A stretch of 64,000 nucleotides of DNA, taken from NCBI RefSeq assembly GCF_032444005.1, contig NC_091283.1:45756001-45820000 (forward strand), written 5' to 3'. Numbering within the stretch: the first letter of the stretch is position 1; each line of letters opens with the position of its first letter. Source of the DNA: Ranitomeya imitator. Lineage: Eukaryota. The notes beneath the pieces are model-generated. The model saw only the letters and a list, made by a program, of their open reading frames with translations. It had not been told where the DNA came from and searched no databases. Both the position numbers and the translations under genes were made by a program. This document shows, one piece after another, positions 22,616 to 34,613 of the stretch.

Positions 22616-22700
22616 ATGGAGATGCTCGCGGGCTTGCGGGAGATCGCCTGTGAGCAGAGCCCCCTGAGCAGGCCGGATGGCTCCGCTACGTTCCTGCAGG
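22616..22700 (+). CDS. EXOSC5: EXOSC5 (Rrp46) exon 1
   Basis: MEMLAGLREIACEQSPLSRPDGSATFLQG|gtaata; SRPDGSA RNase-PH motif; phase-1 donor. Confidence 0.93.
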
Positions 22701-25679: not shown

Positions 25680-26392
25680 AGGTACCGTCACACTAGACGA
25701 TATCGCTAGCGATCCGTGATGTTGCAGCGTCCTCGCTAGCGATATCGTCCAGTGTGACAGGCAGCAGCGATCAGGCCCCTGCTGTGCTGTCGCTGGTCGG
25801 GGAAGAAAGTCCAGAACTTTATTTGGTCGCTGGACTCCCCGTAGACATCGCTGAATCGGCGTGTGTGACACCGATGCAGCGATGTCTTCGCTGGTAACCA
25901 GGGTAAACATCGGGTTACTAAGCGCAGGGCCGCGCTTAGTAACCCAATGTTTACCCTGGTTACCATTGTTAAAGTAAAAAAACAACCGCTACATACTTAC
26001 CTACCGCTGTCTGTCCTTGGCGCTCTGCTTCTCTGCTCTGGCTGTGAGCACAGCGGCCGGAAAGCAGAGCGGTGACGTCACCGCTCTGCTTTCCGGCTGG
26101 CCGGCGCTCACAGCCAGATCAGAGAAGCACAGCGCCGGAGGACAGACAGCGGTAGGTAAGTATGTAGCGGTTGTTTTTTTACTTTTAGGATGGTAACCAG
26201 GGTAAACATCGGGTTACTAAGCGCGGCCCTGCGCTTAGTAATCCGATGTTTACCCTGGTTACCGGGAACCTCGGGATCGTTGGTCGCTGGAGAGCGGTCT
26301 GTGTGACAGCTCTCCAGCGACCAAACAGCGACGCTGCAGCGATCCGGATCGTTGTCGGTATCGCTGCAGCGTCGCTTAGTGTGACGGTACCT
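25680..26392. mobile_element. PIF/Harbinger-type MITE
   Basis: TAA|AGGTACCGTCACACT...AGTGTGACGGTACCT|TAA with internal palindromes; interrupts the plus monomer. Confidence 0.85.
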
Positions 26393-26557: not shown

Positions 26558-27706
26558 CTATTATCCTAAGTCATGTGACAAGGCTCATTAAAGGGTTGAC
26601 ATTGACTTGTAGGATTGCTACCTTCCAATAGGTGGCACTAGAGTTCTAGTTCTCTTCCTCTTTGAAGAGACAATTTGCATAATTAGAAAGAAACCACAGT
26701 AGTTTGACAATAAATGGCTTCACAAGAAATAAACCAAAAAACAATTGAAACGGAGCATATAACTGTTTGTCAACCAGAAAGAACCAAGAAGAAATGCCCC
26801 TAAAATATAACTTTTATTCTATTAGGTAAAAATGACCTAAAAATGGTCAGGAGACAGAAGTTAATCTTAACAATATAACTTAACACTAAAAAGCATAGAG
26901 GTATATAAAGTGAGGGGGTGCTCTTTCCCTTCCTCACCCTACCTTACCGCGGAGGTTGGCACCCTAAATTCGACATGGCGCCCCCACTCGACGACGGCTC
27001 TCCCTTAAGACCCTAAGGGGGACTAACAAAGAAACACCATCGCCAACACCAGTATAATTAAAGTGCTAATGTGCTTTAAAAGTGCTAAATAAACACCTGC
27101 ATAGGTATATACCAATATTTTGATATACCAGTTTTTCCCTTTCGCCACGACAGCACCCCACTGGAGAGAGGGATCCGCCCCGCAGGAACAGGAAACCTAC
27201 CGAGAAATAAAAGGGGGCGGTCCGCCTCTCCTCCTCAGTTTAGGTTTCCTGTTCCTGCGGGAACAATCCAGGAACGACAGGACTACAGGACATACCTGGG
27301 CTAGCATGCCGCCTGCGCGGTATCCTTGAGAACGGCAGGGGCTGCAGCTCAGAAGCAGCGTCGGGGGAGTTACGTTAGACGGCTCCCTCCTCAGCTGGTG
27401 GATGGAGCAGACGGCCGGGTCCGGGGAGGGCCGCCCGGCGTCTTCTCCGGCGTGCGGTGCGGCAAGGAGCCGGGTAAGAGAATCTCCATTGCGGTCCGGT
27501 GCTGAATCCCGGACCGCGCATGCGCCGACCGCCGCAATACTGGCTACCCCGGAACTGAAGGAGTCACTTCCGGGGCGCCTAGGCCGGATCTGGGGCGGGG
27601 GAGCCAGCGGCAACCCGCGCATGCGCATTGCGCAGCGGGGAAAAAAAAAAAAAAAAGAGGAAAAAGGGCGCACTATTTAAAAACGCCCAGAAACAATAAT
27701 GCGGCG

Positions 27707-29170
27707 ATGCAGAGATGTCATCCCCAGGTGCCATGGACCCCACAGCTGGAGATCCAGTGCCCCCCACCAAAGATCACACCAAAGGATCCTCGGAGTCCGC
27801 TCGTAAGAGTGACGGTTCCAGAACAGGATCTCGGCCTTCTGATCCGGTACTATTCGCTTCACTGGGTGAGTGTTTAAACTCTGCCTATTAAGCTGACGCT
27901 GTCTCCCTATTTCTCTCTCTTTTCTCTCTCTCTCGCTACTTATTACGCCCAGTCTAAAAAACGACAAAAGTCCAAGCATAAGGAATGTGCCTTGTGTAGC
28001 CAGCCCCTTCCGGACTCATACCCCAAAAAACTGTGCAAAGACTGTTTCAAGGAAACAACTCAAGGAGCGACAGTGTCCGTTACGGACTTACGGGCCATTA
28101 TTAGAGAGGAGCTTAAAAATATGACCCAGGAAATACCGCGTAAAGCTAAGTCCAAAACACCAACACTTCTGTCAGACTCCGAAAGTGACCAGACGGTACT
28201 GTCAGAAGCCTCCCTATCATCATCATCATCTTCCTCAGAAATTGAGGGGCGTTCATGTTTCCCCTTAGACAGTGTGGACAACTTGGTAAAATCAATCCGC
28301 AATACCATGGGGTGTGAGGAGGTAAAGGGTGCGCAAACCACGCAGGAAATTATGTTTGCGGGTTTGGCAGAGAGAAAGAGGAGATGTTTTCCGGTTATAC
28401 CAGCGGTGAAAGCATTAATTAAAAGAGAGTGGGAGAAGCAGGATCAAAGAAGCTTTTTGCCCTCCGCGTCTAAACGTAAATATCCGTTTAGTGATGAGGA
28501 GCTCCTTACATGGACCAAAGTGCCTAAGGTCGATGCAGCCGTAGCTTCTACCTCCAAGCAATCCACTCTGCCTGTGGAGGATGCGGGACTTCTGGTCGAT
28601 CCATTAGATCGCAAAGCTGAATCATCCCTTAAGCGATCTTGGGAGGCGGCTACAGGAATTTTTAAACCTGCAGTAGCCAGCACCTGCGCTGCCCGGTCAA
28701 TGATCATTTGGATTGATCAGTTGGACCAGCAGATCGAAAATAAAGTTTCGAGAGAGAAACTTAGAGCGGCCATCCCCTTAATACGTGGAGCAGCAGCTTT
28801 TATGGCGGACGCATCTGCCGACTCGCTTCGGTTAGCAGCGAGATCCGCAGGTCTTGTGAACAATGCAAGACGCGCACTTTGGATGAAAAGTTGGAAAGGG
28901 GACGCGCAGTCTAAATCCAAAATATGCGCAATCCCATGCGAGGGTGAGTACCTCTTTGGCAAGACCTTAGATGAGATACTCAAAAAGGCAAAGGACAGGA
29001 AGAAAGCTTTCCCTGATTCCTCTATTCCCTTTTACAGGAGAGCCTTTAAGAGGAGACCGTTTGGTAAAAGGAGGCAAACGGATAGGTCTACAACATGGAC
29101 TGCTAAAGAGGACAGGCAAAGAGGTACCATGTTTAGAAGACCCAACCCCCCAAAAGACAATAAATTCTGA
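27707..29170 (+). CDS. DIRS gag (predicted spliced: 27707-27865 + 27953-29170, 458 aa)
   Basis: Open frame with CALC-x12-CKDC, PKVDAAV, DPLDRK, RRALW, GEYLFG. No in-frame ATG before the zinc finger unless the 87-nt GT-AG intron (in-frame TAA at 27875) is removed. Confidence 0.75.
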
Positions 29171-31061
29171 GGATATACCAGTAGGGGGCAGACTGAAATT
29201 TTTCGCCACACAATGGGAAAAAGTAACATCTAGCTCGTGGGTTTTAAACATCATCCGAGATGGAATTAAACTACAATTCTCTCGTGTTCCCCACGAGTCA
29301 TATATTATAACATCCCTCAGCTCGCCCGCACAACAGCAGGCTCTAGAGCTAGAAATTCAAACCCTATTATCAAAGCGGGTTTTAGTCCAAGTCCCCGAGG
29401 GACAGGAAGGCAGAGGATTCTACTCTCCCTTATTCCTGATTTCTAAACCCGACGGTTCTTTCAGGACCATCATAAACCTTAAAAAGCTCAATTCATTTGT
29501 TAAAAACCATACATTTAAGATGGAATCCATTAGATCCACTATAAAACTCCTCTTTCCAAACTGTATGATGGGGGGCATTGATTTGAAAGATGCTTATTAT
29601 CATCTCCCTATCCATGACCGATACCAAAAGTACCTCAGAGTAGCAGTGACAATCAACGGCGAGATTCATCATTTCCAATATACAGCCATGCCCTTCGGCC
29701 TTTCAACAGCACCGAGGATCTTTACCAAGATAATGCTAGAGGTGATGGCCTACCTTCGCCAAAAAGAAACCTTAATTGTTCCCTATCTGGATGACTTTTT
29801 GGTCATTGGAAATTCAGTTACTCAATGTGCTGATCGTTTGGCTCATGCAATTTCCTCTCTACAGGGTTTAGGCTGGATAATCAATACCAACAAATCCAGA
29901 CTCACTCCGCTATCCTGCCAGGCGTTCTTGGGGTTCCATCTAGACTCCGTATCTCAAAAGTGTCTCCTGCCTCAGGTAAAAATACTACTGATCAAACACA
30001 AAGTCCTAGCGGCGATAAACAATCCACGTATATCCCTAAGACAAGCTATGTCCTTACTAGGATCTCTTATCTCTTGTATACCTGCGGTAAAATGGGCTCA
30101 ACATCATACCCGTACACTGCAACACCAGATTTTACAAGAAGATAGACGGTTATCTGGTCACCTAAATGTGAAAATAACCTTATCTCAGGAAGTTTTAACT
30201 TCCTTAACGTGGTGGCTGAATTCAGACCATTTAATGAGTGGTGTTCCATGGATAATAACACCATCTCATACCATAACCACGGACGCCAGTTCTCATGGAT
30301 GGGGCGCTCATATGGGGAATGATTTTTGCCAAGGGCTTTGGAACATGGAGGAAAGCTGCTATTCCTCTAATGTTAAAGAATTAAATGCAGTAAAATACGC
30401 CTTATGCCATTTTCTCCCACAGCTACGAGGGAAAGACGTCAGAATCCTTTCCGACAACACCACCACAGTGGCGTATCTAAACAGGCAAGGAGGCACGCGA
30501 TCAGAGACTCTGATGTCTTCTGCTACAGAAATCCTGAATCTAGCAGAAAGTCACCTAACATCCCTTACTGCACTGCATATAAGAGGGGAAAACAACCAGC
30601 AGGCAGACTTCTTAAGTCGACACACCTTGAAACAAGGAGAGTGGTGCCTAAACCAGCAGATTTTTCGGGATATAGTATCCCTATGGGGTCAACCTCAAGT
30701 AGATCTCTTCGCCACAAGAAGAAACAAAAAAGTCCGGAAATTTGCCTCCCTATCTCTAGCAGATCATCCGGACATTCTGGACGCTCTCCAAGCCCCTTGG
30801 CAGTTCAGTCTAGCATATGCTTTTCCGCCGATCATACTGCTGCCCCAAGTCATTCGCAAAATCAGAACCGAAGGAGCGAGGGTGATACTAATAGCTCCAT
30901 TCTGGCCCAAGAGACCATGGTTCTCGTGGCTGCAAACCATGTCGGTCTCAGATCCTTGGGTCCTCCCCTCAACACCCAATCTTCTCTTCCAGGGTCCGTT
31001 TTTCCACCCTCAAGTGGACAGTCTACATCTCACGGCCTGGAATTTGAGAGGCAGATGCTAA
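28971..31061 (+). CDS. DIRS pol: reverse transcriptase, RNase H, methyltransferase-like domain
   Basis: 696-aa uninterrupted ORF: IDLKDAYYH, MPFGL, YLDD, TDAS..GWG, KELNAV, SDNTTTVAYLNRQGG, ADFLSR, VDLFAT, YAFPP. Confidence 0.95.
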   Translation: MRYSKRQRTGRKLSLIPLFPFTGEPLRGDRLVKGGKRIGLQHGLLKRTGKEVPCLEDPTPQKTINSEDIPVGGRLKFFATQWEKVTSSSWVLNIIRDGIKLQFSRVPHESYIITSLSSPAQQQALELEIQTLLSKRVLVQVPEGQEGRGFYSPLFLISKPDGSFRTIINLKKLNSFVKNHTFKMESIRSTIKLLFPNCMMGGIDLKDAYYHLPIHDRYQKYLRVAVTINGEIHHFQYTAMPFGLSTAPRIFTKIMLEVMAYLRQKETLIVPYLDDFLVIGNSVTQCADRLAHAISSLQGLGWIINTNKSRLTPLSCQAFLGFHLDSVSQKCLLPQVKILLIKHKVLAAINNPRISLRQAMSLLGSLISCIPAVKWAQHHTRTLQHQILQEDRRLSGHLNVKITLSQEVLTSLTWWLNSDHLMSGVPWIITPSHTITTDASSHGWGAHMGNDFCQGLWNMEESCYSSNVKELNAVKYALCHFLPQLRGKDVRILSDNTTTVAYLNRQGGTRSETLMSSATEILNLAESHLTSLTALHIRGENNQQADFLSRHTLKQGEWCLNQQIFRDIVSLWGQPQVDLFATRRNKKVRKFASLSLADHPDILDALQAPWQFSLAYAFPPIILLPQVIRKIRTEGARVILIAPFWPKRPWFSWLQTMSVSDPWVLPSTPNLLFQGPFFHPQVDSLHLTAWNLRGRC

Positions 31062-32072
31062 AATCAAGGGGGTTCTCAGAGGGATTGATAAACACGCTCC
31101 TCCAGAGTAGAAAACCTTCCACTACAAAAATTTACACAAAAATATGGAAGAAATTCCTACAATTCCATACATCTTCAAACACCTCAGAAATTCCGATACA
31201 GTCTATCCTGGAATTTCTTCAAAAAGGGAGAGAACTAGGTTTAACTGCAAACACCTTAAAAGTTCATGTTTCAGCACTAGGAGCTCTCTATGGCCATAAC
31301 ATTGCGGGGAATAGATGGGTATCCCGATTTATTACAGCCTGTGAACGGATAAATCCAGTTAATATACCTAGAGTTCCTCCCTGGGATCTAAACTTAGTTT
31401 TACAAGCCCTAACAGACTCTCCATTCGAAACCAATAGATTCAATACCAATCAAGATCCTATCACTAAAAACGGCCCTCTTGGTAGCACTGACTTCAGCCA
31501 GGAGAATCAGTGACATCCAAGCACTCTCTATAGATCCACCCTTCCTGCTAACTTTTCAGGATAAGTTGGTCCTTAAACCAGACCCTTCCTACCTTCCCAA
31601 AGTAGCTAAGACATTCCATAGGTCTCAGGAAATAATCTTGCCCACTTTCTTCAGTAATCCTTCCACTCCTGAAGAACAAAAGTACCACACTCTAGATGTT
31701 AAAAGAGTAGTGTTAAAGTACATTGAAAGAACCTGTAGCTGGCGACAGTGTAGGGCTCTGTTTATTTCCTTCCAGGGTCACAAGAAGGGTCATGGAATAA
31801 CGAAAAGCACGTTATCCCGGTGGATCAGAGAGTCTATCAGACTGGCCTATTCCGCGAGTAAAGAAAACCCTCCGGAAGGCATAACAGCGCACTCTACCAG
31901 AGCTATGGCATCCTCCTGGGCAGAAAGGGGAGAGGTCCCAATTGAGACTATATGTAAGGCGGCAACTTGGTCAAATCCCTCTACATTCTATGATCACTAT
32001 AGGCTTGACCTATCGTCAACTTCTGACCTAGACTTTGGCAGGACTGTCCTCAGCACGGTGGTCCCCCCCTAG
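30404..32072 (+). pseudogene. DIRS tyrosine recombinase with a single +1 frameshift
   Basis: SARRISD, HSTR, W and HYRL catalytic motifs. Removing one A at 31428-31430 restores PFEPIDSIPIKILSLKTALLVALTSARR. The conserved part starts near ATG 31055. Confidence 0.9.
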
Positions 32073-32091
32073 GTGATGGTCTCTGTAAGAT

Positions 32092-32175
32092 CTCCAGTGG
32101 GGTGCTGTCGTGGCGAAAGGGAAAAAGCCGGATTACTCACCGGTAATACTCTTTTAGTGAGTCCACGACAGCACC
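32092..32175 (+). other. DIRS internal complementary region (ICR)
   Basis: CTCCAGTGGGGTGCTGTCGTGGCGAAAGGGAAAAA is complementary to the element 5' end; GCCGGATTACTCACCGG...GTCCACGACAGCACC is complementary to the 3' end. Confidence 0.92.
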
Positions 32176-32897
32176 CTCTTATATCCCTCCCTATATTAAT
32201 ATAGTACTTACTATTGAGTAAAATTCTTTTAATCATATATGAGCAAATAAGTTTGAAAATGAAATAAATTATATTTGCCTAATACTGGCGGTCCTCCGGG
32301 TACTCTGAAATCAAAACTGAGGAGGAGAGGCGGACCGCCCCCTTTTATTTCTCGGTAGGTTTCCTGTTCCTGCGGGGCGGATCCCTCTCTCCAGTGGGCT
32401 GCTGTCGTGGACTCACTAAAAGAGTATTACCGGTGAGTAATCCGGCTTTTTTCTTTTTTTCAGGATTCCTTTTAGTATGAATCCTGATGCCTTTTTAACT
32501 AAGGTGCAGCTGTGAGCAGAGATATATGGAATAGTATTTTAGCAATAGGCTTACTAATTGTGCCGTATCTTAAATCATTACATATCACCTCATAGTAGAG
32601 ATGCAAAAGAATTCAAGCAGTGAGGAGTAGCATTCCCAAAGAGGTGTATTAATGGAGTATATCAACAACACATCTCAGACCTCTCACTATAGCCAATAGA
32701 CATAAGACACACTGCTCCTGGTCAAATCAATAGTCAAATTGCCAGGTGTCATCAGTCACAGAGTGTCCATTAAAAACATTCACATTTGCTGAATAAATCA
32801 TTCCTTAGTTATATGCCATATTTAGAAAAAAATGCAGGGATATAATTGATCCATAATCAGACCGTGGTCATAGAAAAAAAATTAGTACAGGTAGTAC

Positions 32898-33426
32898 AGC
32901 GATGTCTTCACTGGTAACCAGGGTAAACATCGGGTTACTAAGAGCAGGGCCGCGCTTAGTAACCCGATGTTTACCCTGGTTACCATTGTAAATGTAAAAA
33001 AAAAAAAAAAAAACACATACTTACATTCCGGTGTCTGTCGCGTCCCCCGGCGTCAGCTTCCCTGCACTGTCAGCGCCGGCCAGCTGTAAAGTAGAGCACA
33101 GCGGTGACGTCACCGCTCTGCTTTACGACCGGCACTGACACAGTGCAGGGAAGCTGACGCCGGGGGACGCGACAGACACCGGAATGTAAGTATGTAGTGT
33201 TTTTTTTTTTTTTACATTTACAATGGTAACCAGGGTAAACATCGGGTTACTAAGCGCGACCCTGCGCTTAGTAACCCGATGTTTACCCTGGTTACCAGGG
33301 GACTTCGGCATCGTTGGTCGCTGGAGAGCTGTCTGTGTGACAGCTCTCCAGCGACCAAACAGCGACGCTGCAGCGATCGGCATCGTTGTCTATATCGCTG
33401 CAGCGTCGCTTAATGTGATGGTACCT
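32898..33426. mobile_element. 5'-truncated copy of the 25680-26392 Harbinger-type MITE
   Basis: Shares the GGTAACCAGGGTAAACATCGGGTTACTAAG palindromes and right end GTGATGGTACCT|TAA. Confidence 0.8.
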
Positions 33427-34613
33427 TAAGTCCCCCTTAGGGTCTTAAGGGAGAGCCGTCGTCGAGTGGGGGCGCCATGTCGAATTTAGGGTGCCAACCT
33501 CCGCGGTAAGGTAGGGTGAGGAAGGGAAAGAGCACCCCATCACTTTATATACCTCTATCCTTTTTAGTGTTAAGTTATGTTGTTAAGAGTAACTTCTGTC
33601 TCCTGACCCTTTTTAGGTCATTTTTACCTAATAGAATAAAAGTTATATTTTAGGGGCATTTCTTCTTGGTTCTTTCTGGTTGACAAATAAATGGCTTCAC
33701 CCAATCACTAACCAAGAGTGGAGAAAAAGTTTTGGTGTTGTTATTCATAGTCTCTGAAAAAAGGCCAAGAAAGAAAAAATTCTGCCGGGGTGTGTAAACT
33801 TTTGAGCACAACTGTAGATGGAGCAGGGAGCAATGGATTTTGTTTTTGAAGCCCCACGATCATCAACCACCAATGTAACGGAGCCACCAAAAAGTGCAGG
33901 ATGGTGCTGTCTACCACAGCCTGCTCTGGAAGGAGAAGGGTCTGCAATAACCCATTCCTCGTCCCTGTGTGCCACATAGACACAGCGAGGGGCAGGGATC
34001 GGTAGCGCCCCCGTGCTGAAGCTGTGGGAACCACTAGTCGTGCTCCTGGCATCCACCTGGGCAGCCACCATAGGGAAAGCCGGAGCCCAGCCGAGGCGGC
34101 TCCGTTCCCAGAAGAGGAGATCTTGGGGTGCGCAGGAAGGAAGCGGATCCTGGCGGCCACATAACAAGAAGAAATCACTATTAACCGTTGACTGTCCGAT
34201 CCCCTCGCCGGAAAACTAAAAAGAATTGCCCCAACCTAGCCAGAGGAGCCATAGTACGGGTCTGTGCTCAAGAAGAGGAAACATTAAGGTGCAGCGCAAT
34301 GTGCCATGAATCTCGTGTGGTTCTGCACCTAGTGAGTCCAGGCCCCCCGGGGTCACAGCTCCTGGGGCACTTCACACCTCCAGCCTTCACTTACCTGACC
34401 CCATGGCTTTGATCCTCGGGGGCAGGGCCTCCCACTGTATGACTATATAAGCCACCCAGCGTCCACCCTGATGACCCCGCTTCCAGGGTGCACGATGGAC
34501 CCTTATACCAGGGCAGCCCCGGCCACAGCTGCCTTTATGAAGGGTACTAGGGATCTTGGCCTACAGGGCGAGCAGTGACCTGCAGATGTCATACTGCATG
34601 AGGGAGCATGAAA

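What the first reader, a model, noticed from the sequence alone, without database searches (positions are those of the whole stretch)
27707..31061. Splice-coded expression program in a DIRS retrotransposon: one donor, three acceptors, two leader frames
Seen: a strong donor CTGG|GTGAGT (27865/27866) and three pyrimidine-tract acceptors at 27953 (before the gag zinc finger), 29038 (ccctgattcctctattcccttttacag, before RT) and 30993 (cccaatcttctcttccag, before the conserved YR). The ATG-27707 frame is phase 0 at the donor: it joins gag and removes an in-frame TAA, but stops at once (GAG AGC CTT TAA) if spliced to 29038. The ATG-27715/27733 frame is phase 1: it joins RT (..SLG-EPLRG..) and YR (..SLG-SVFPP..) in frame, but stops (GTC TAA) if spliced to 27953. 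Each isoform would make exactly one protein. Inference: this explains how the overlapping ORFs are translated without frameshifting. Each phase match alone has a 1-in-3 chance, and YR could instead use reinitiation at ATGCTAA (31055-31061). I cannot tell whether this has been described before.
Basis: partly seen in the sequence, partly recalled or inferred. Interest (0 to 1): 0.85.

Follow-up and report, generated by a model that had tools for sequence, protein, structure and literature searches.

The report
Spliced introns in a frog DIRS retrotransposon

Summary
The element is a DIRS1-like retrotransposon (27132-32457) of a Ranitomeya frog, lying sense in EXOSC5 intron 1.

**Supported**
- One NCBI model (P0049) has exactly the leader-to-RT junction 27865>29038.
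- Acceptor 27953 is used in many gag models and in seven host-gag chimeras.

**Not supported**
- Gag models use the ATG-27715 (MSSP) frame, not ATG-27707. They use a weaker donor 19 nt upstream (27846|27847). That donor motif (CG|GTA) and frame restoration recur in two distant DIRS families.
- The RT acceptor is paired in 14 models (four junction types, three species) with a local donor inside gag (28943|28944). This is a 94-nt intron giving Gag-Pol.
- No model uses 30993. The YR frame is kept open for 205 codons upstream of it.
- RNA contigs from four studies show none of the three junctions. They show only an RT-internal 123-nt intron. Contigs drop rare forms, so this is weak evidence.

**Other points**
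- The TAA that splicing would "remove" is copy-specific.
- Other first readers of this scan noted the gag intron and the 94-nt intron on other DNA of this genome.

Verdict: splicing-based expression is likely. The exact scheme is unlikely.

The parts
27132..27248 (+). Left inverted terminal repeat of the DIRS element
   Evidence: 104-nt arm 27145-27248 is 97% complementary to 32307-32410; 27132-27167 is complementary to the ICR
27675..27683 (+). TATA-like motif TATTTAAAA about 30-40 nt before the ATG cluster (inferred possible internal promoter)
   Evidence: Read from the sequence. Runs X1 and X2 have zero depth at 27458-27636 and contigs that begin at 27670 and 27711. Inference only.
27715..27846 (+). 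Leader exon, 44 codons from ATG 27715 (MSSPGAMDP...SRPSDP), up to the weak donor CCG|GTACTA
   Evidence: NCBI models P0001, P0049 and the family-2 models P0202-P0215 start in this frame. No Pfam match.
27707..27865 (+). Alternative leader frame from ATG 27707 (MQRCHP...), in phase with gag
   Evidence: Seen as protein only in P0201, which reads through the intron in a copy with a sense codon at 27875-27877. The 27875 T>A variant is present in RNA contigs of X1 and X2.
27847..27952 (+). Intron 1 (106 nt): donor GTACTA, CTGAC branch-site motif, about 50-nt CT tract (86% pyrimidine), CAG acceptor. Removal fuses the leader to the gag zinc finger.
   Evidence: Junction SDP|SKKRQK in P0001. Frame restored. 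Same CG|GTA donor and frame restoration in L001 (102 nt) and L002 (110 nt). Intron features.
27866..27871 (+).
   Evidence: Joined to 29038 in P0049. A strong donor lies at a similar offset in L002 (GTAAGC) but is absent in L001.
27953..29170 (+). gag (zinc finger CALC...CKDC plus LAP2alpha-like domain); 27953 is the first base after acceptor 1
   Evidence: Pfam LAP2alpha, E = 1e-19. Seven host-gag chimeric models join exactly at this residue.
28944..29037 (+). Intron 2 (94 nt): GAGG|GTGAGT ... CTGAT branch-site motif ... TTTTACAG|G. Removal drops the last 76 gag codons and shifts +1 into RT, giving Gag-Pol.
   Evidence: Second-best donor and best acceptor of the element. Junction C[EQ]G|[EK]P.. 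in 14 models, four junction types, three species. In-frame join.
28971..31061 (+). ORF2: reverse transcriptase, RNase H and a C-terminal domain (methyltransferase-like in DIRS)
   Evidence: Pfam RVT_1 E = 1e-19; RNase H-like hits are below cut-off
29742..29864 (+). RT-internal intron of 123 nt (GAG|GTGATG ... CTCTACAG|G) that removes the YLDD active site
   Evidence: GT..AG joint in RNA contigs of X4 and X10. Also in models P0004, P0049-P0052. Its acceptor also receives MOB3A exons in P0054/P0056.
29976..30422 (+). Second RT/RNase H-internal intron of 447 nt (CAG|GTAAAA ... CTCCCACAG|C). Its acceptor lies 46 nt after the point where the YR frame opens.
   Evidence: Junction LLPQ|LRGKD in P0049, P0050, P0052, P0053, P0056, P0216
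30377..31513 (+). YR frame, first part. Open from 30377 and overlapping ORF2 by 685 nt; candidate ATGs at 30404, 30683, 30917 and 31055.
   Evidence: 16 stops in this frame at 29168-30374, then none for 378 codons. 0 stops versus 9.5 expected by codon shuffle. SAM-like integrase N-domain.
30993..30993 (+).
   Evidence: Present and 5th-best AG. No strict branch-site motif in the preceding 80 nt. All 11 YR-containing models matched read straight through it.
31479..32072 (+). YR catalytic part, in another frame in this copy. The YR gene is broken by a frameshift between about 31430 and 31510.
   Evidence: Two ORFs. Phage_integrase hit. Other copies differ by one letter at 31428.
32091..32176 (+). 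Internal complementary region (ICR)
   Evidence: Complementary to the ends of both ITRs
32307..32457 (+). Right inverted terminal repeat

Best explanation
This is a nearly complete DIRS1-like retrotransposon whose RNA is probably processed by the host spliceosome at two short introns that genomic copies retain, much as retroviral proviruses retain their introns.

Intron 1 (27847-27952, 106 nt) has a weak donor. Removing it fuses a 44-codon leader starting at ATG 27715 to the gag zinc finger, giving gag an AUG.

Intron 2 (28944-29037, 94 nt) has very strong sites. Removing it cuts off the gag tail and shifts +1 into RT, so spliced RNA encodes Gag-Pol and unspliced RNA encodes full Gag.

The strong donor at 27866 is an alternative 5' site of the leader exon. 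It can skip gag and join the same RT acceptor.

The recombinase is not reached through 30993. Its frame is the gag frame and is kept open from 30377, so it starts upstream by a route still unknown.

Shown here: the sites, the frames, the gene-model junctions and the recurrence in other families. Inferred: that these splices occur in vivo at useful levels and serve expression.
For: - **DIRS identity:** ITRs and ICR; LAP2alpha-like gag, RT, RNase H-like and integrase domains.
- **Leader frame:** P0001, P0003, P0049 and more than 10 family-2 loci start MSSP....
- **Intron 1:** junction SDP|SKKRQK. The CG|GTA donor plus acceptor restore the leader-gag frame in three families with intron lengths of 106, 102 and 110 nt, that is all three length classes modulo 3. 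Intron features: CTGAC or TACTAAC branch-site motifs and a long pyrimidine tract.
- **Natural experiment:** in the L001 family a T7/T8 length difference inside the intron breaks the read-through frame in 7 of 18 otherwise near-identical contigs.
- **Acceptor 1:** seven host-gag chimeric models, from two annotation sets by their protein names, join exactly there.
- **Intron 2:** the 2nd-best donor and best acceptor of the element lie 94 nt apart in the gag/pol overlap. The join is in frame. The same junction occurs in 14 models, four junction types, three species.
- **Leader to RT:** P0049.
- **Models are probably RNA-based:** their odd 123-nt RT intron appears independently as a GT..AG joint in RNA contigs of two studies. 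Those studies behave as RNA on the EXOSC5 exon-1 control.
Against: - No junction contig for intron 1, intron 2 or leader>RT was found in four runs. Contigs cross all these sites unspliced, though contigs drop minor forms and intronic copies in host pre-mRNA add unspliced signal.
- All Logan contigs of the L001/L002 families are unspliced.
- I could not see the RNA support behind the NCBI models, nor the DNA of any other dendrobatid copy.
- The intron-1 donor is weak (rank 54 of 225).
- The intron-2 donor and acceptor coincide with conserved residues (G-E-Y; FP..IPFY), so they could be by-products of coding. They are absent in L001 and L002.
- P0201 and the 27875 variant show that some copies can make gag from ATG 27707 without splicing.
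- The same models also carry RT-destroying introns, which looks like promiscuous splicing.
Confidence: 0.5

Rival explanations
1. Incidental (cryptic) splicing. The splice-like sites are by-products of codon and amino-acid composition. The spliceosome cuts DIRS RNA, or host pre-mRNA carrying intronic DIRS copies, at many such sites. The products are mostly useless or even limit the element. Proteins come from unspliced RNA: gag from ATG 27707 in copies without the TAA, and pol and YR by frameshifting, reinitiation or internal starts.
For: - RT-internal introns that delete the YLDD motif and part of RNase H are in the same models, and one is in RNA contigs.
- Host exons splice into DIRS acceptors.
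- The element sits sense in an EXOSC5 intron.
- The minus strand has equally strong donor motifs.
- The dominant RNA contigs are unspliced.
- P0201 reads gag through from ATG 27707.
- The intron-2 donor is missing in L001 and L002.
Against: - The intron-1 position, its CG|GTA donor and frame restoration hold across three length classes in very distant families.
- The MSSP leader is conserved between families in the frame that needs splicing.
- The gag exon has no in-frame ATG before the zinc finger.
- The T8 variant in the L001 family is tolerated.
- The best donor-acceptor pair of the element sits exactly in the gag/pol overlap and is in frame.
Confidence: 0.3
2. A single donor at 27865|27866 feeds three acceptors (27953, 29038, 30993). 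Two overlapping leader frames (ATG 27707 for gag, ATG 27715 for RT and YR) ensure that each spliced RNA makes exactly one protein.
For: - All phases are as stated.
- P0049 has the 27865>29038 junction.
- The ATG-27707 frame is open for 53 codons and continues into gag in P0201.
- In L002 a strong donor at a similar offset also lies a multiple of 3 (81 nt) before the acceptor, with an upstream ATG in the gag frame.
Against: - No model or contig shows 27865>27953 or 27865>30993.
- Spliced gag models use the MSSP frame and another donor.
- RT is joined to gag in 14 models and to the leader in one.
- The YR frame is open 205 codons before 30993, 0 stops versus 9.5 expected.
- L001 lacks this donor.
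- The TAA is not shared by all copies.
Confidence: 0.07
3. Annotation artefact. There is no splicing of the element's own RNA. The gene predictors placed GT-AG introns to bridge frames and stops in repeated pseudogene-like copies.
For: - I could not inspect the RNA evidence behind any model.
- Models of repeats are often chimeric, for example 'MOB kinase activator 3A' and 'DGCR6' with DIRS parts.
- No junction contigs for the key introns.
Against: - The 123-nt intron of the models is seen independently in RNA contigs of two studies.
- In-frame deletions of conserved RT sequence are not what an ab initio predictor would introduce.
- Annotations of three species give the same junctions, and acceptor 1 is also used in a second annotation set of R. 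imitator.
Confidence: 0.1

Closest known systems
DIRS1-like retrotransposons (DIRS order; Dictyostelium DIRS-1, Xenopus, fish and reptile DIRS1-like families)
   Same: Inverted terminal repeats plus an internal complementary region. ORF1 with a LAP2alpha-like domain. RT/RNase H ORF with an extra C-terminal domain. Tyrosine recombinase whose ORF overlaps pol at length (overlap described in PMC3266345).
   Different: Native spliceosomal introns are not mentioned in the DIRS1-like overview: 'intron' and 'splic' occur 0 times in PMC3266345. They are also absent from the fungal survey PMC3783388. In the DIRS-1 replication paper, introns appear only as artificial reporters (PMC7192593). How the overlapping ORFs are translated is left open there.
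Ogre Ty3/gypsy elements of legumes (intron between gag-pro and RT, partly spliced). From my own knowledge of Steinbauerova et al. 2008; Ogre appears in the hits of the search, which I did not open.
   Same: A short intron retained in genomic copies sits at the gag/pol boundary, and its removal puts pol in frame with the upstream ORF. This is the same logic as intron 2 here.
   Different: LTR element with integrase, in plants. Splicing was shown experimentally there; here it rests on gene models only.
Ty1/copia elements with spliced subgenomic gag RNA (Drosophila copia, barley BARE, Arabidopsis Copia)
   Same: Alternative splicing of one primary transcript sets the ratio of Gag to Gag-Pol while unspliced RNA is the replication template. 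The BARE abstract (PMC3735527) raises the same question of how the translated and replicated roles of the transcript are balanced; the Arabidopsis abstract (PMC5580714) reports a conserved genome expression strategy for Ty1/Copia. The splicing details are from my own knowledge; only the abstracts were read.
   Different: There splicing removes pol to make more Gag. Here splicing would create the Gag-Pol fusion and give gag its start codon.
Retroviral alternative splicing (one major 5' donor, several acceptors)
   Same: One model (P0049) does show the leader donor joined to a distant acceptor.
   Different: Most junctions here are local short introns with their own donors. No env-like or accessory genes. 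No evidence for the third acceptor.
LAP2alpha (TMPO) and ZNF451 exons derived from DIRS gag (Abascal et al. 2015, PMC4495291)
   Same: [quoted passage not shown] The gag acceptor at 27953, which captures host exons in seven frog gene models, is a concrete candidate for it.
   Different: Those are domesticated mammalian host exons, not mobile elements. The correspondence of the acceptor position was not tested here.

Membership tests
DIRS1-like retrotransposon | Inverted terminal repeats | tested here: met
   27145-27248 versus 32307-32410, 104 nt, 97% complementary
DIRS1-like retrotransposon | Internal complementary region matching the outer ends of both ITRs | tested here: met
   32091-32126 is complementary to 27132-27167 (100%); 32116-32176 is complementary to 32397-32457 (95%)
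DIRS1-like retrotransposon | Tyrosine recombinase instead of DDE integrase | tested here: met
   Phage_int_SAM_4 (E = 1.4e-5) and Phage_integrase (E = 1.5e-4), both just under Pfam cut-offs. Close homologues carry PF00589. The gene is frameshifted in this copy.
DIRS1-like retrotransposon | RT and RNase H related to Ty3/gypsy, followed by a methyltransferase-like domain | tested here: inconclusive
   RVT_1 E = 1e-19; RNase H-like hits below cut-off. No Pfam hit for the C-terminal third in this copy, though relatives carry PF05869.
DIRS1-like retrotransposon | Long overlap of the pol and YR ORFs | tested here: met
   YR frame open at 30377-31513 while ORF2 ends at 31061. 0 stops versus 9.5 expected.
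Retroelement with splicing-based gene expression (retrovirus, copia, BARE or Ogre type) | Canonical GT-AG introns with branch site and pyrimidine tract, retained in genomic copies | tested here: met
   Introns 27847-27952 and 28944-29037 have GT..AG, CTGAC/CTGAT motifs and pyrimidine tracts. Retained in this copy and in all Logan contigs of L001 and L002.
Retroelement with splicing-based gene expression (retrovirus, copia, BARE or Ogre type) | Spliced junctions observed in RNA | tested here: inconclusive
   No joint for 27846/27865>27953, 27865>29038, 28943>29038 or 27865>30993 in contigs of X1, X2, X4 and X10. Only 29739>29863 was seen. Contigs lose minor isoforms, and raw reads were not available. 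Junctions exist in NCBI models.
Retroelement with splicing-based gene expression (retrovirus, copia, BARE or Ogre type) | Splicing restores or creates the reading frames of the element's proteins | tested here: met
   Leader-gag, gag-RT and leader-RT joins are all in frame
Retroelement with splicing-based gene expression (retrovirus, copia, BARE or Ogre type) | Sites and phases conserved among related elements | tested here: inconclusive
   Intron 1 is conserved in position and frame effect in L001, L002 and, by protein junctions, at least 6 dendrobatid families. The intron-2 junction occurs as four junction types in dendrobatids but its donor is absent in L001 and L002. The donor at 27866 is present in L002 and absent in L001. 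DNA of other dendrobatid copies could not be fetched.
   Only 27865>29038 is found, in one model (P0049). 27953 is used with another donor or with host exons. 30993 is never used.
   Spliced gag models start MSSP (ATG-27715 frame). The 27707 frame appears only unspliced, in P0201.

The most novel reading that the evidence does not exclude
Vertebrate DIRS retrotransposons are intron-bearing retroelements. A conserved 5' intron gives gag its start codon. In dendrobatid families a second 94-nt intron replaces ribosomal frameshifting as the way to make Gag-Pol, with an alternative leader donor that can bypass gag. The conserved gag acceptor is the very site that let DIRS gag be captured as the alternative LAP2alpha and ZNF451 exons of mammals, and it still traps host exons in frogs today.
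Probability: 0.4. Interest if true: 0.75.

Novelty: new variant of a known kind. Interest (0 to 1): 0.55.

Why it matters
How DIRS elements translate their heavily overlapping ORFs is not addressed in the DIRS papers I could search. If introns 1 and 2 are real, DIRS would join copia, BARE, Ogre and the retroviruses as elements that use the host spliceosome to set protein ratios. It would be the first case I could find for a tyrosine-recombinase retroelement.

It would also mean that unspliced RNA must be selected as the replication template.

The gag acceptor gives a concrete mechanism for exon trapping by intronic DIRS copies. It is also a candidate for the splice acceptor that Abascal et al. 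(PMC4495291) inferred in the birth of LAP2alpha.

For genome annotation, it explains the many 'LAP2-like' and chimeric gene models in poison-frog genomes.

Tried and rejected
- **RNA contigs of four runs from four studies:** This is weak negative evidence, because contigs drop rare forms. Only one read-laying run was allowed, and no raw-read run was offered.
- **Control on EXOSC5 exon 1 plus flank:** other runs of studies P2, P3 and P4 hold 13-32% of the words. DNA runs hold over 90%. So those studies behave as RNA. X1 held none.
- **DNA of other dendrobatid copies:** fetching the loci of P0049 and P0128 failed because the files are too large. Site conservation within the family could only be read from protein junctions.
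- **Spliced forms among Logan proteins and contigs of the L001 and L002 families:** none found. All are unspliced.
- **Motif statistics:** splice-site strength alone does not exceed what the opposite strand gives. I rejected it as evidence.
- **A 5'UTR intron 27474-27710** (strong donor CGG|GTAAGA; zero depth in X1 and X2): no acceptor signal and no joint. Dropped.
- **A local donor that could shift ORF2 into the YR frame before 30993:** the only decent one (30881|30882) gives a 111-nt in-frame intron. Rejected.
- **Reinitiation at ATGCTAA (31055):** the Met is Leu or Ile in most other families, so this is not a conserved start.
- **Goodwin and Poulter 2001:** not held in the library, so I cannot exclude that introns were mentioned there.


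Full report
**What is there**

Window 27132-32457 is a DIRS1-like retrotransposon.
- It has 104-nt inverted terminal repeats (27145-27248 and 32307-32410).
- It has an internal complementary region (32091-32176) that matches the outer ends of both repeats.
- It encodes a gag with a zinc finger and a LAP2alpha-like domain (27953-29170).
- It encodes an RT/RNase H ORF (28971-31061).
- It encodes a tyrosine recombinase in two pieces (30404-31513 and 31479-32072), because this copy has a frameshift.

The closest proteins are NCBI models from Ranitomeya imitator and R. variabilis, at 92-98% identity. The host is therefore a dendrobatid poison frog. The element lies in sense orientation after EXOSC5 exon 1 (22617-22700). 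It is bracketed by an unrelated 259-nt inverted repeat.

**The observation**

- Donor CTGG|GTGAGT is at 27865|27866.
- The acceptors are at 27953, 29038 and 30993.
- The ATG-27707 frame joins gag across an 87-nt intron that contains a TAA.
- The ATG-27715 frame joins RT and YR in phase 1.
- The crossed joins stop at once.

Motif strength is not significant by itself. With a rough consensus matrix, 27866 is the 4th-best GT and 29038 the best AG of the element. The opposite strand carries equally good donors.

**What the gene models say**

I could not fetch DNA of other Ranitomeya copies. I read the splice junctions from proteins of three NCBI annotations (R. imitator, R. variabilis, Dendrobates tinctorius). 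An earlier R. imitator annotation added further host-gag joins at acceptor 27953.

*Leader to RT.* P0049 (XP_069588445.1) reads MSYPGAMDP...VLFASLG|EPLRGDRL. This is exactly the predicted 27865>29038 join. The same model also skips 123 nt and 447 nt inside RT. It therefore lacks the YLDD motif and part of RNase H.

*Leader to gag.* P0001 reads MSSPGAMDP...SRPSDP|SKKRQK.
- This is the ATG-27715 frame.
- The intron is 106 nt and the join is in frame.
- Family-2 models at more than ten loci, and at least four further families, have the same architecture. The leader mostly ends in Pro, followed by |AKR....
- No spliced model starts in the ATG-27707 frame. That frame appears once, in P0201, as an unspliced read-through in a copy with a sense codon where this copy has TAA. 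The same T>A difference at 27875 is common in the RNA contigs. So the TAA is copy-specific.

*Gag to RT.* Fourteen models with four different junction sequences from three species read ...C[EQ]G|[EK]P.... This corresponds to donor GAGG|GTGAGT at 28943|28944 joined to 29038. It is a 94-nt intron that removes the last 76 gag codons and shifts +1 into RT. This donor and acceptor are the 2nd-best GT and the best AG of the whole element.

*YR.* All 11 YR-containing models that matched read straight through 30993 in the YR frame. They start 25 to about 220 residues upstream of it.

**Are the models RNA-based?**

I could not see their evidence. However, the peculiar 123-nt RT intron of the models appears independently as a GT..AG joint (29739>29863) in contigs of runs X4 and X10.

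Sister runs of studies P2, P3 and P4 hold only 13-32% of an EXOSC5 exon-1-plus-flank probe. Genuine DNA runs hold over 90%. That is the pattern expected of RNA.

In those same contigs none of the other junctions appears, and contigs cross all three acceptors unspliced. This is weak negative evidence. Contigs keep the major form only, and intronic DIRS copies in pre-mRNA add unspliced signal.

**Other families**

Logan contigs of two distant DIRS families (gag about 42% identical) were fetched.

Both have a short leader ORF, then CG|GTA, then a pyrimidine tract and CAG directly before the basic patch and zinc finger. L001 also has a perfect TACTAAC branch motif.

Splicing at the CG|GTA donor restores the leader-gag frame in all three families. 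The intron lengths are 106, 102 and 110 nt, which covers all three length classes modulo 3.

| Feature | Window | L001 | L002 |
|---|---|---|---|
| Intron-1 length (CG\|GTA donor to acceptor) | 106 nt | 102 nt | 110 nt |
| Strong second donor about 20-30 nt downstream | GTGAGT, 87 nt before the acceptor | absent | GTAAGC, 81 nt before the acceptor |
| Donor inside gag (intron 2) | present | absent | absent |

In the L001 family, 7 of 18 near-identical full-length contigs from different runs carry one extra T in the intron's T tract. This breaks the read-through frame, while the rest of the element is unchanged. That is what one expects if this stretch is not translated.

The intron-2 donor is absent in L001 and L002. 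Intron 2 is therefore lineage-specific, or a by-product of the conserved G-E-Y codons.

**Acceptor 1 as an exon trap**

Seven chimeric models (SH3, PDI, Sm, tRNA methyltransferase and others) join host sequence to gag at exactly the residue after acceptor 27953. [quoted passage not shown] This acceptor is a candidate for that site.

**The recombinase**

The YR frame is the same frame as gag.
- Over ORF2 it has 16 stops between 29168 and 30374, then none for 378 codons.
- In the 228 overlap codons, 0 stops are seen against 9.5 expected from codon shuffling; none of 5000 shuffles reached 0.

A leader-to-30993 splice would make the 205 open codons upstream of 30993 pointless. No strict branch-site motif precedes 30993.

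The acceptor at 30423 is used in several models. It lies 46 nt after the frame opens and is also phase 1 for the YR frame, so it would fit a spliced YR message better than 30993. I have no junction evidence for it. How YR is translated stays open.

**Best reading and rivals**

The most likely reading (about 0.5) is two retained introns plus an alternative leader donor. Intron 1 gives gag its AUG. Intron 2 makes Gag-Pol. The strong donor at 27866 can bypass gag.

The main rival (about 0.3) is incidental splicing of a sequence rich in splice-like motifs, with the proteins made from unspliced RNA. The RT-destroying introns and the host chimeras show that such promiscuous splicing does happen.

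A pure annotation artefact is also unlikely (about 0.1).

**Known or new**

Splicing that sets Gag to Pol ratios or joins gag to pol is established for copia, BARE, Arabidopsis Copia and Ogre elements and for retroviruses. This rests on abstracts listed and on my own knowledge of Ogre and copia.

For DIRS I found nothing.
- The DIRS1-like overview never uses the words intron or splice.
- Neither does the fungal DIRS/Ngaro survey.
- The DIRS-1 replication paper uses only an artificial intron.
- Goodwin and Poulter 2001 was not available.

Other first readers of this scan noted the gag intron and the 94-nt intron on other DNA of this genome. These are unchecked notes, not independent evidence.

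I class the finding as a new variant of a known kind. It still needs junction-level RNA evidence.

Noticed in passing
window 29742-29864 and 29976-30422: Two GT..AG introns lie inside RT/RNase H. The 123-nt one removes the YLDD active site. It is seen as a joint in RNA contigs of X4 and X10 and in NCBI models of two species. Its acceptor also receives MOB3A exons in Dendrobates tinctorius models. The 447-nt one is in six models. Both would inactivate Pol.
   Followed up: partly
L001 599-4952 (also L005-L021): In this distant DIRS family, gag and the recombinase share one reading frame that is open for 4.35 kb, with a single stop (the gag TGA at 2048). Over 630 pol codons the overprinted frame has 0 stops against 22 expected (0 of 2000 codon shuffles). 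This suggests stop read-through or some other use of a pol-overprinting frame to reach YR.
   Followed up: partly
window 29168-31513: In the window too, the YR frame equals the gag frame (30404-27953 = 817 x 3). Over ORF2 it has 15 stops against about 31 expected by codon shuffle, and none in the last 228 codons.
   Followed up: partly
L001 family, intron at L001 668-769: T7 and T8 variants of the intron's pyrimidine tract occur in 11 and 7 otherwise near-identical full-length contigs from different runs. T8 breaks the read-through frame of gag.
   Followed up: yes
window 27675-27717: A TATA-like motif TATTTAAAA is followed by three ATGs in the three frames, 8 nt apart (27699, 27707, 27715). 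Runs X1 and X2 have no depth at 27458-27636, and their contigs begin at 27711 and 27670. This may be an internal promoter giving a short-leader mRNA in which ATG 27715 is the first usable start.
   Followed up: no
window 22617-22700 and 27132-32457: The DIRS lies in sense orientation in intron 1 of EXOSC5. The exon-1 donor (CAGG|GTAATA) is phase 1, like the RT and YR-frame acceptors, so in-frame host-DIRS chimeras are possible.
   Followed up: partly
window 26766-27024 and 33429-33687: A 259-nt inverted repeat (98% complementary) brackets the DIRS at a spacing of 6.4 kb. Further palindromic repeats lie at 25893-26263 and 32911-33298. The DIRS seems to sit between inverted copies of another repeat.
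   Followed up: no
window 31428-31513: This copy's recombinase gene is split into two frames. Contigs of all four runs differ by one letter at 31428.
   Followed up: no
window 30917: ACCATGG, a strong start context, lies in the YR frame 25 codons before 30993. It is formed by the conserved Pro-Trp of ORF2. The NCBI model P0169 starts at the matching Met, and a Met is present there in about half of the related families.
   Followed up: no
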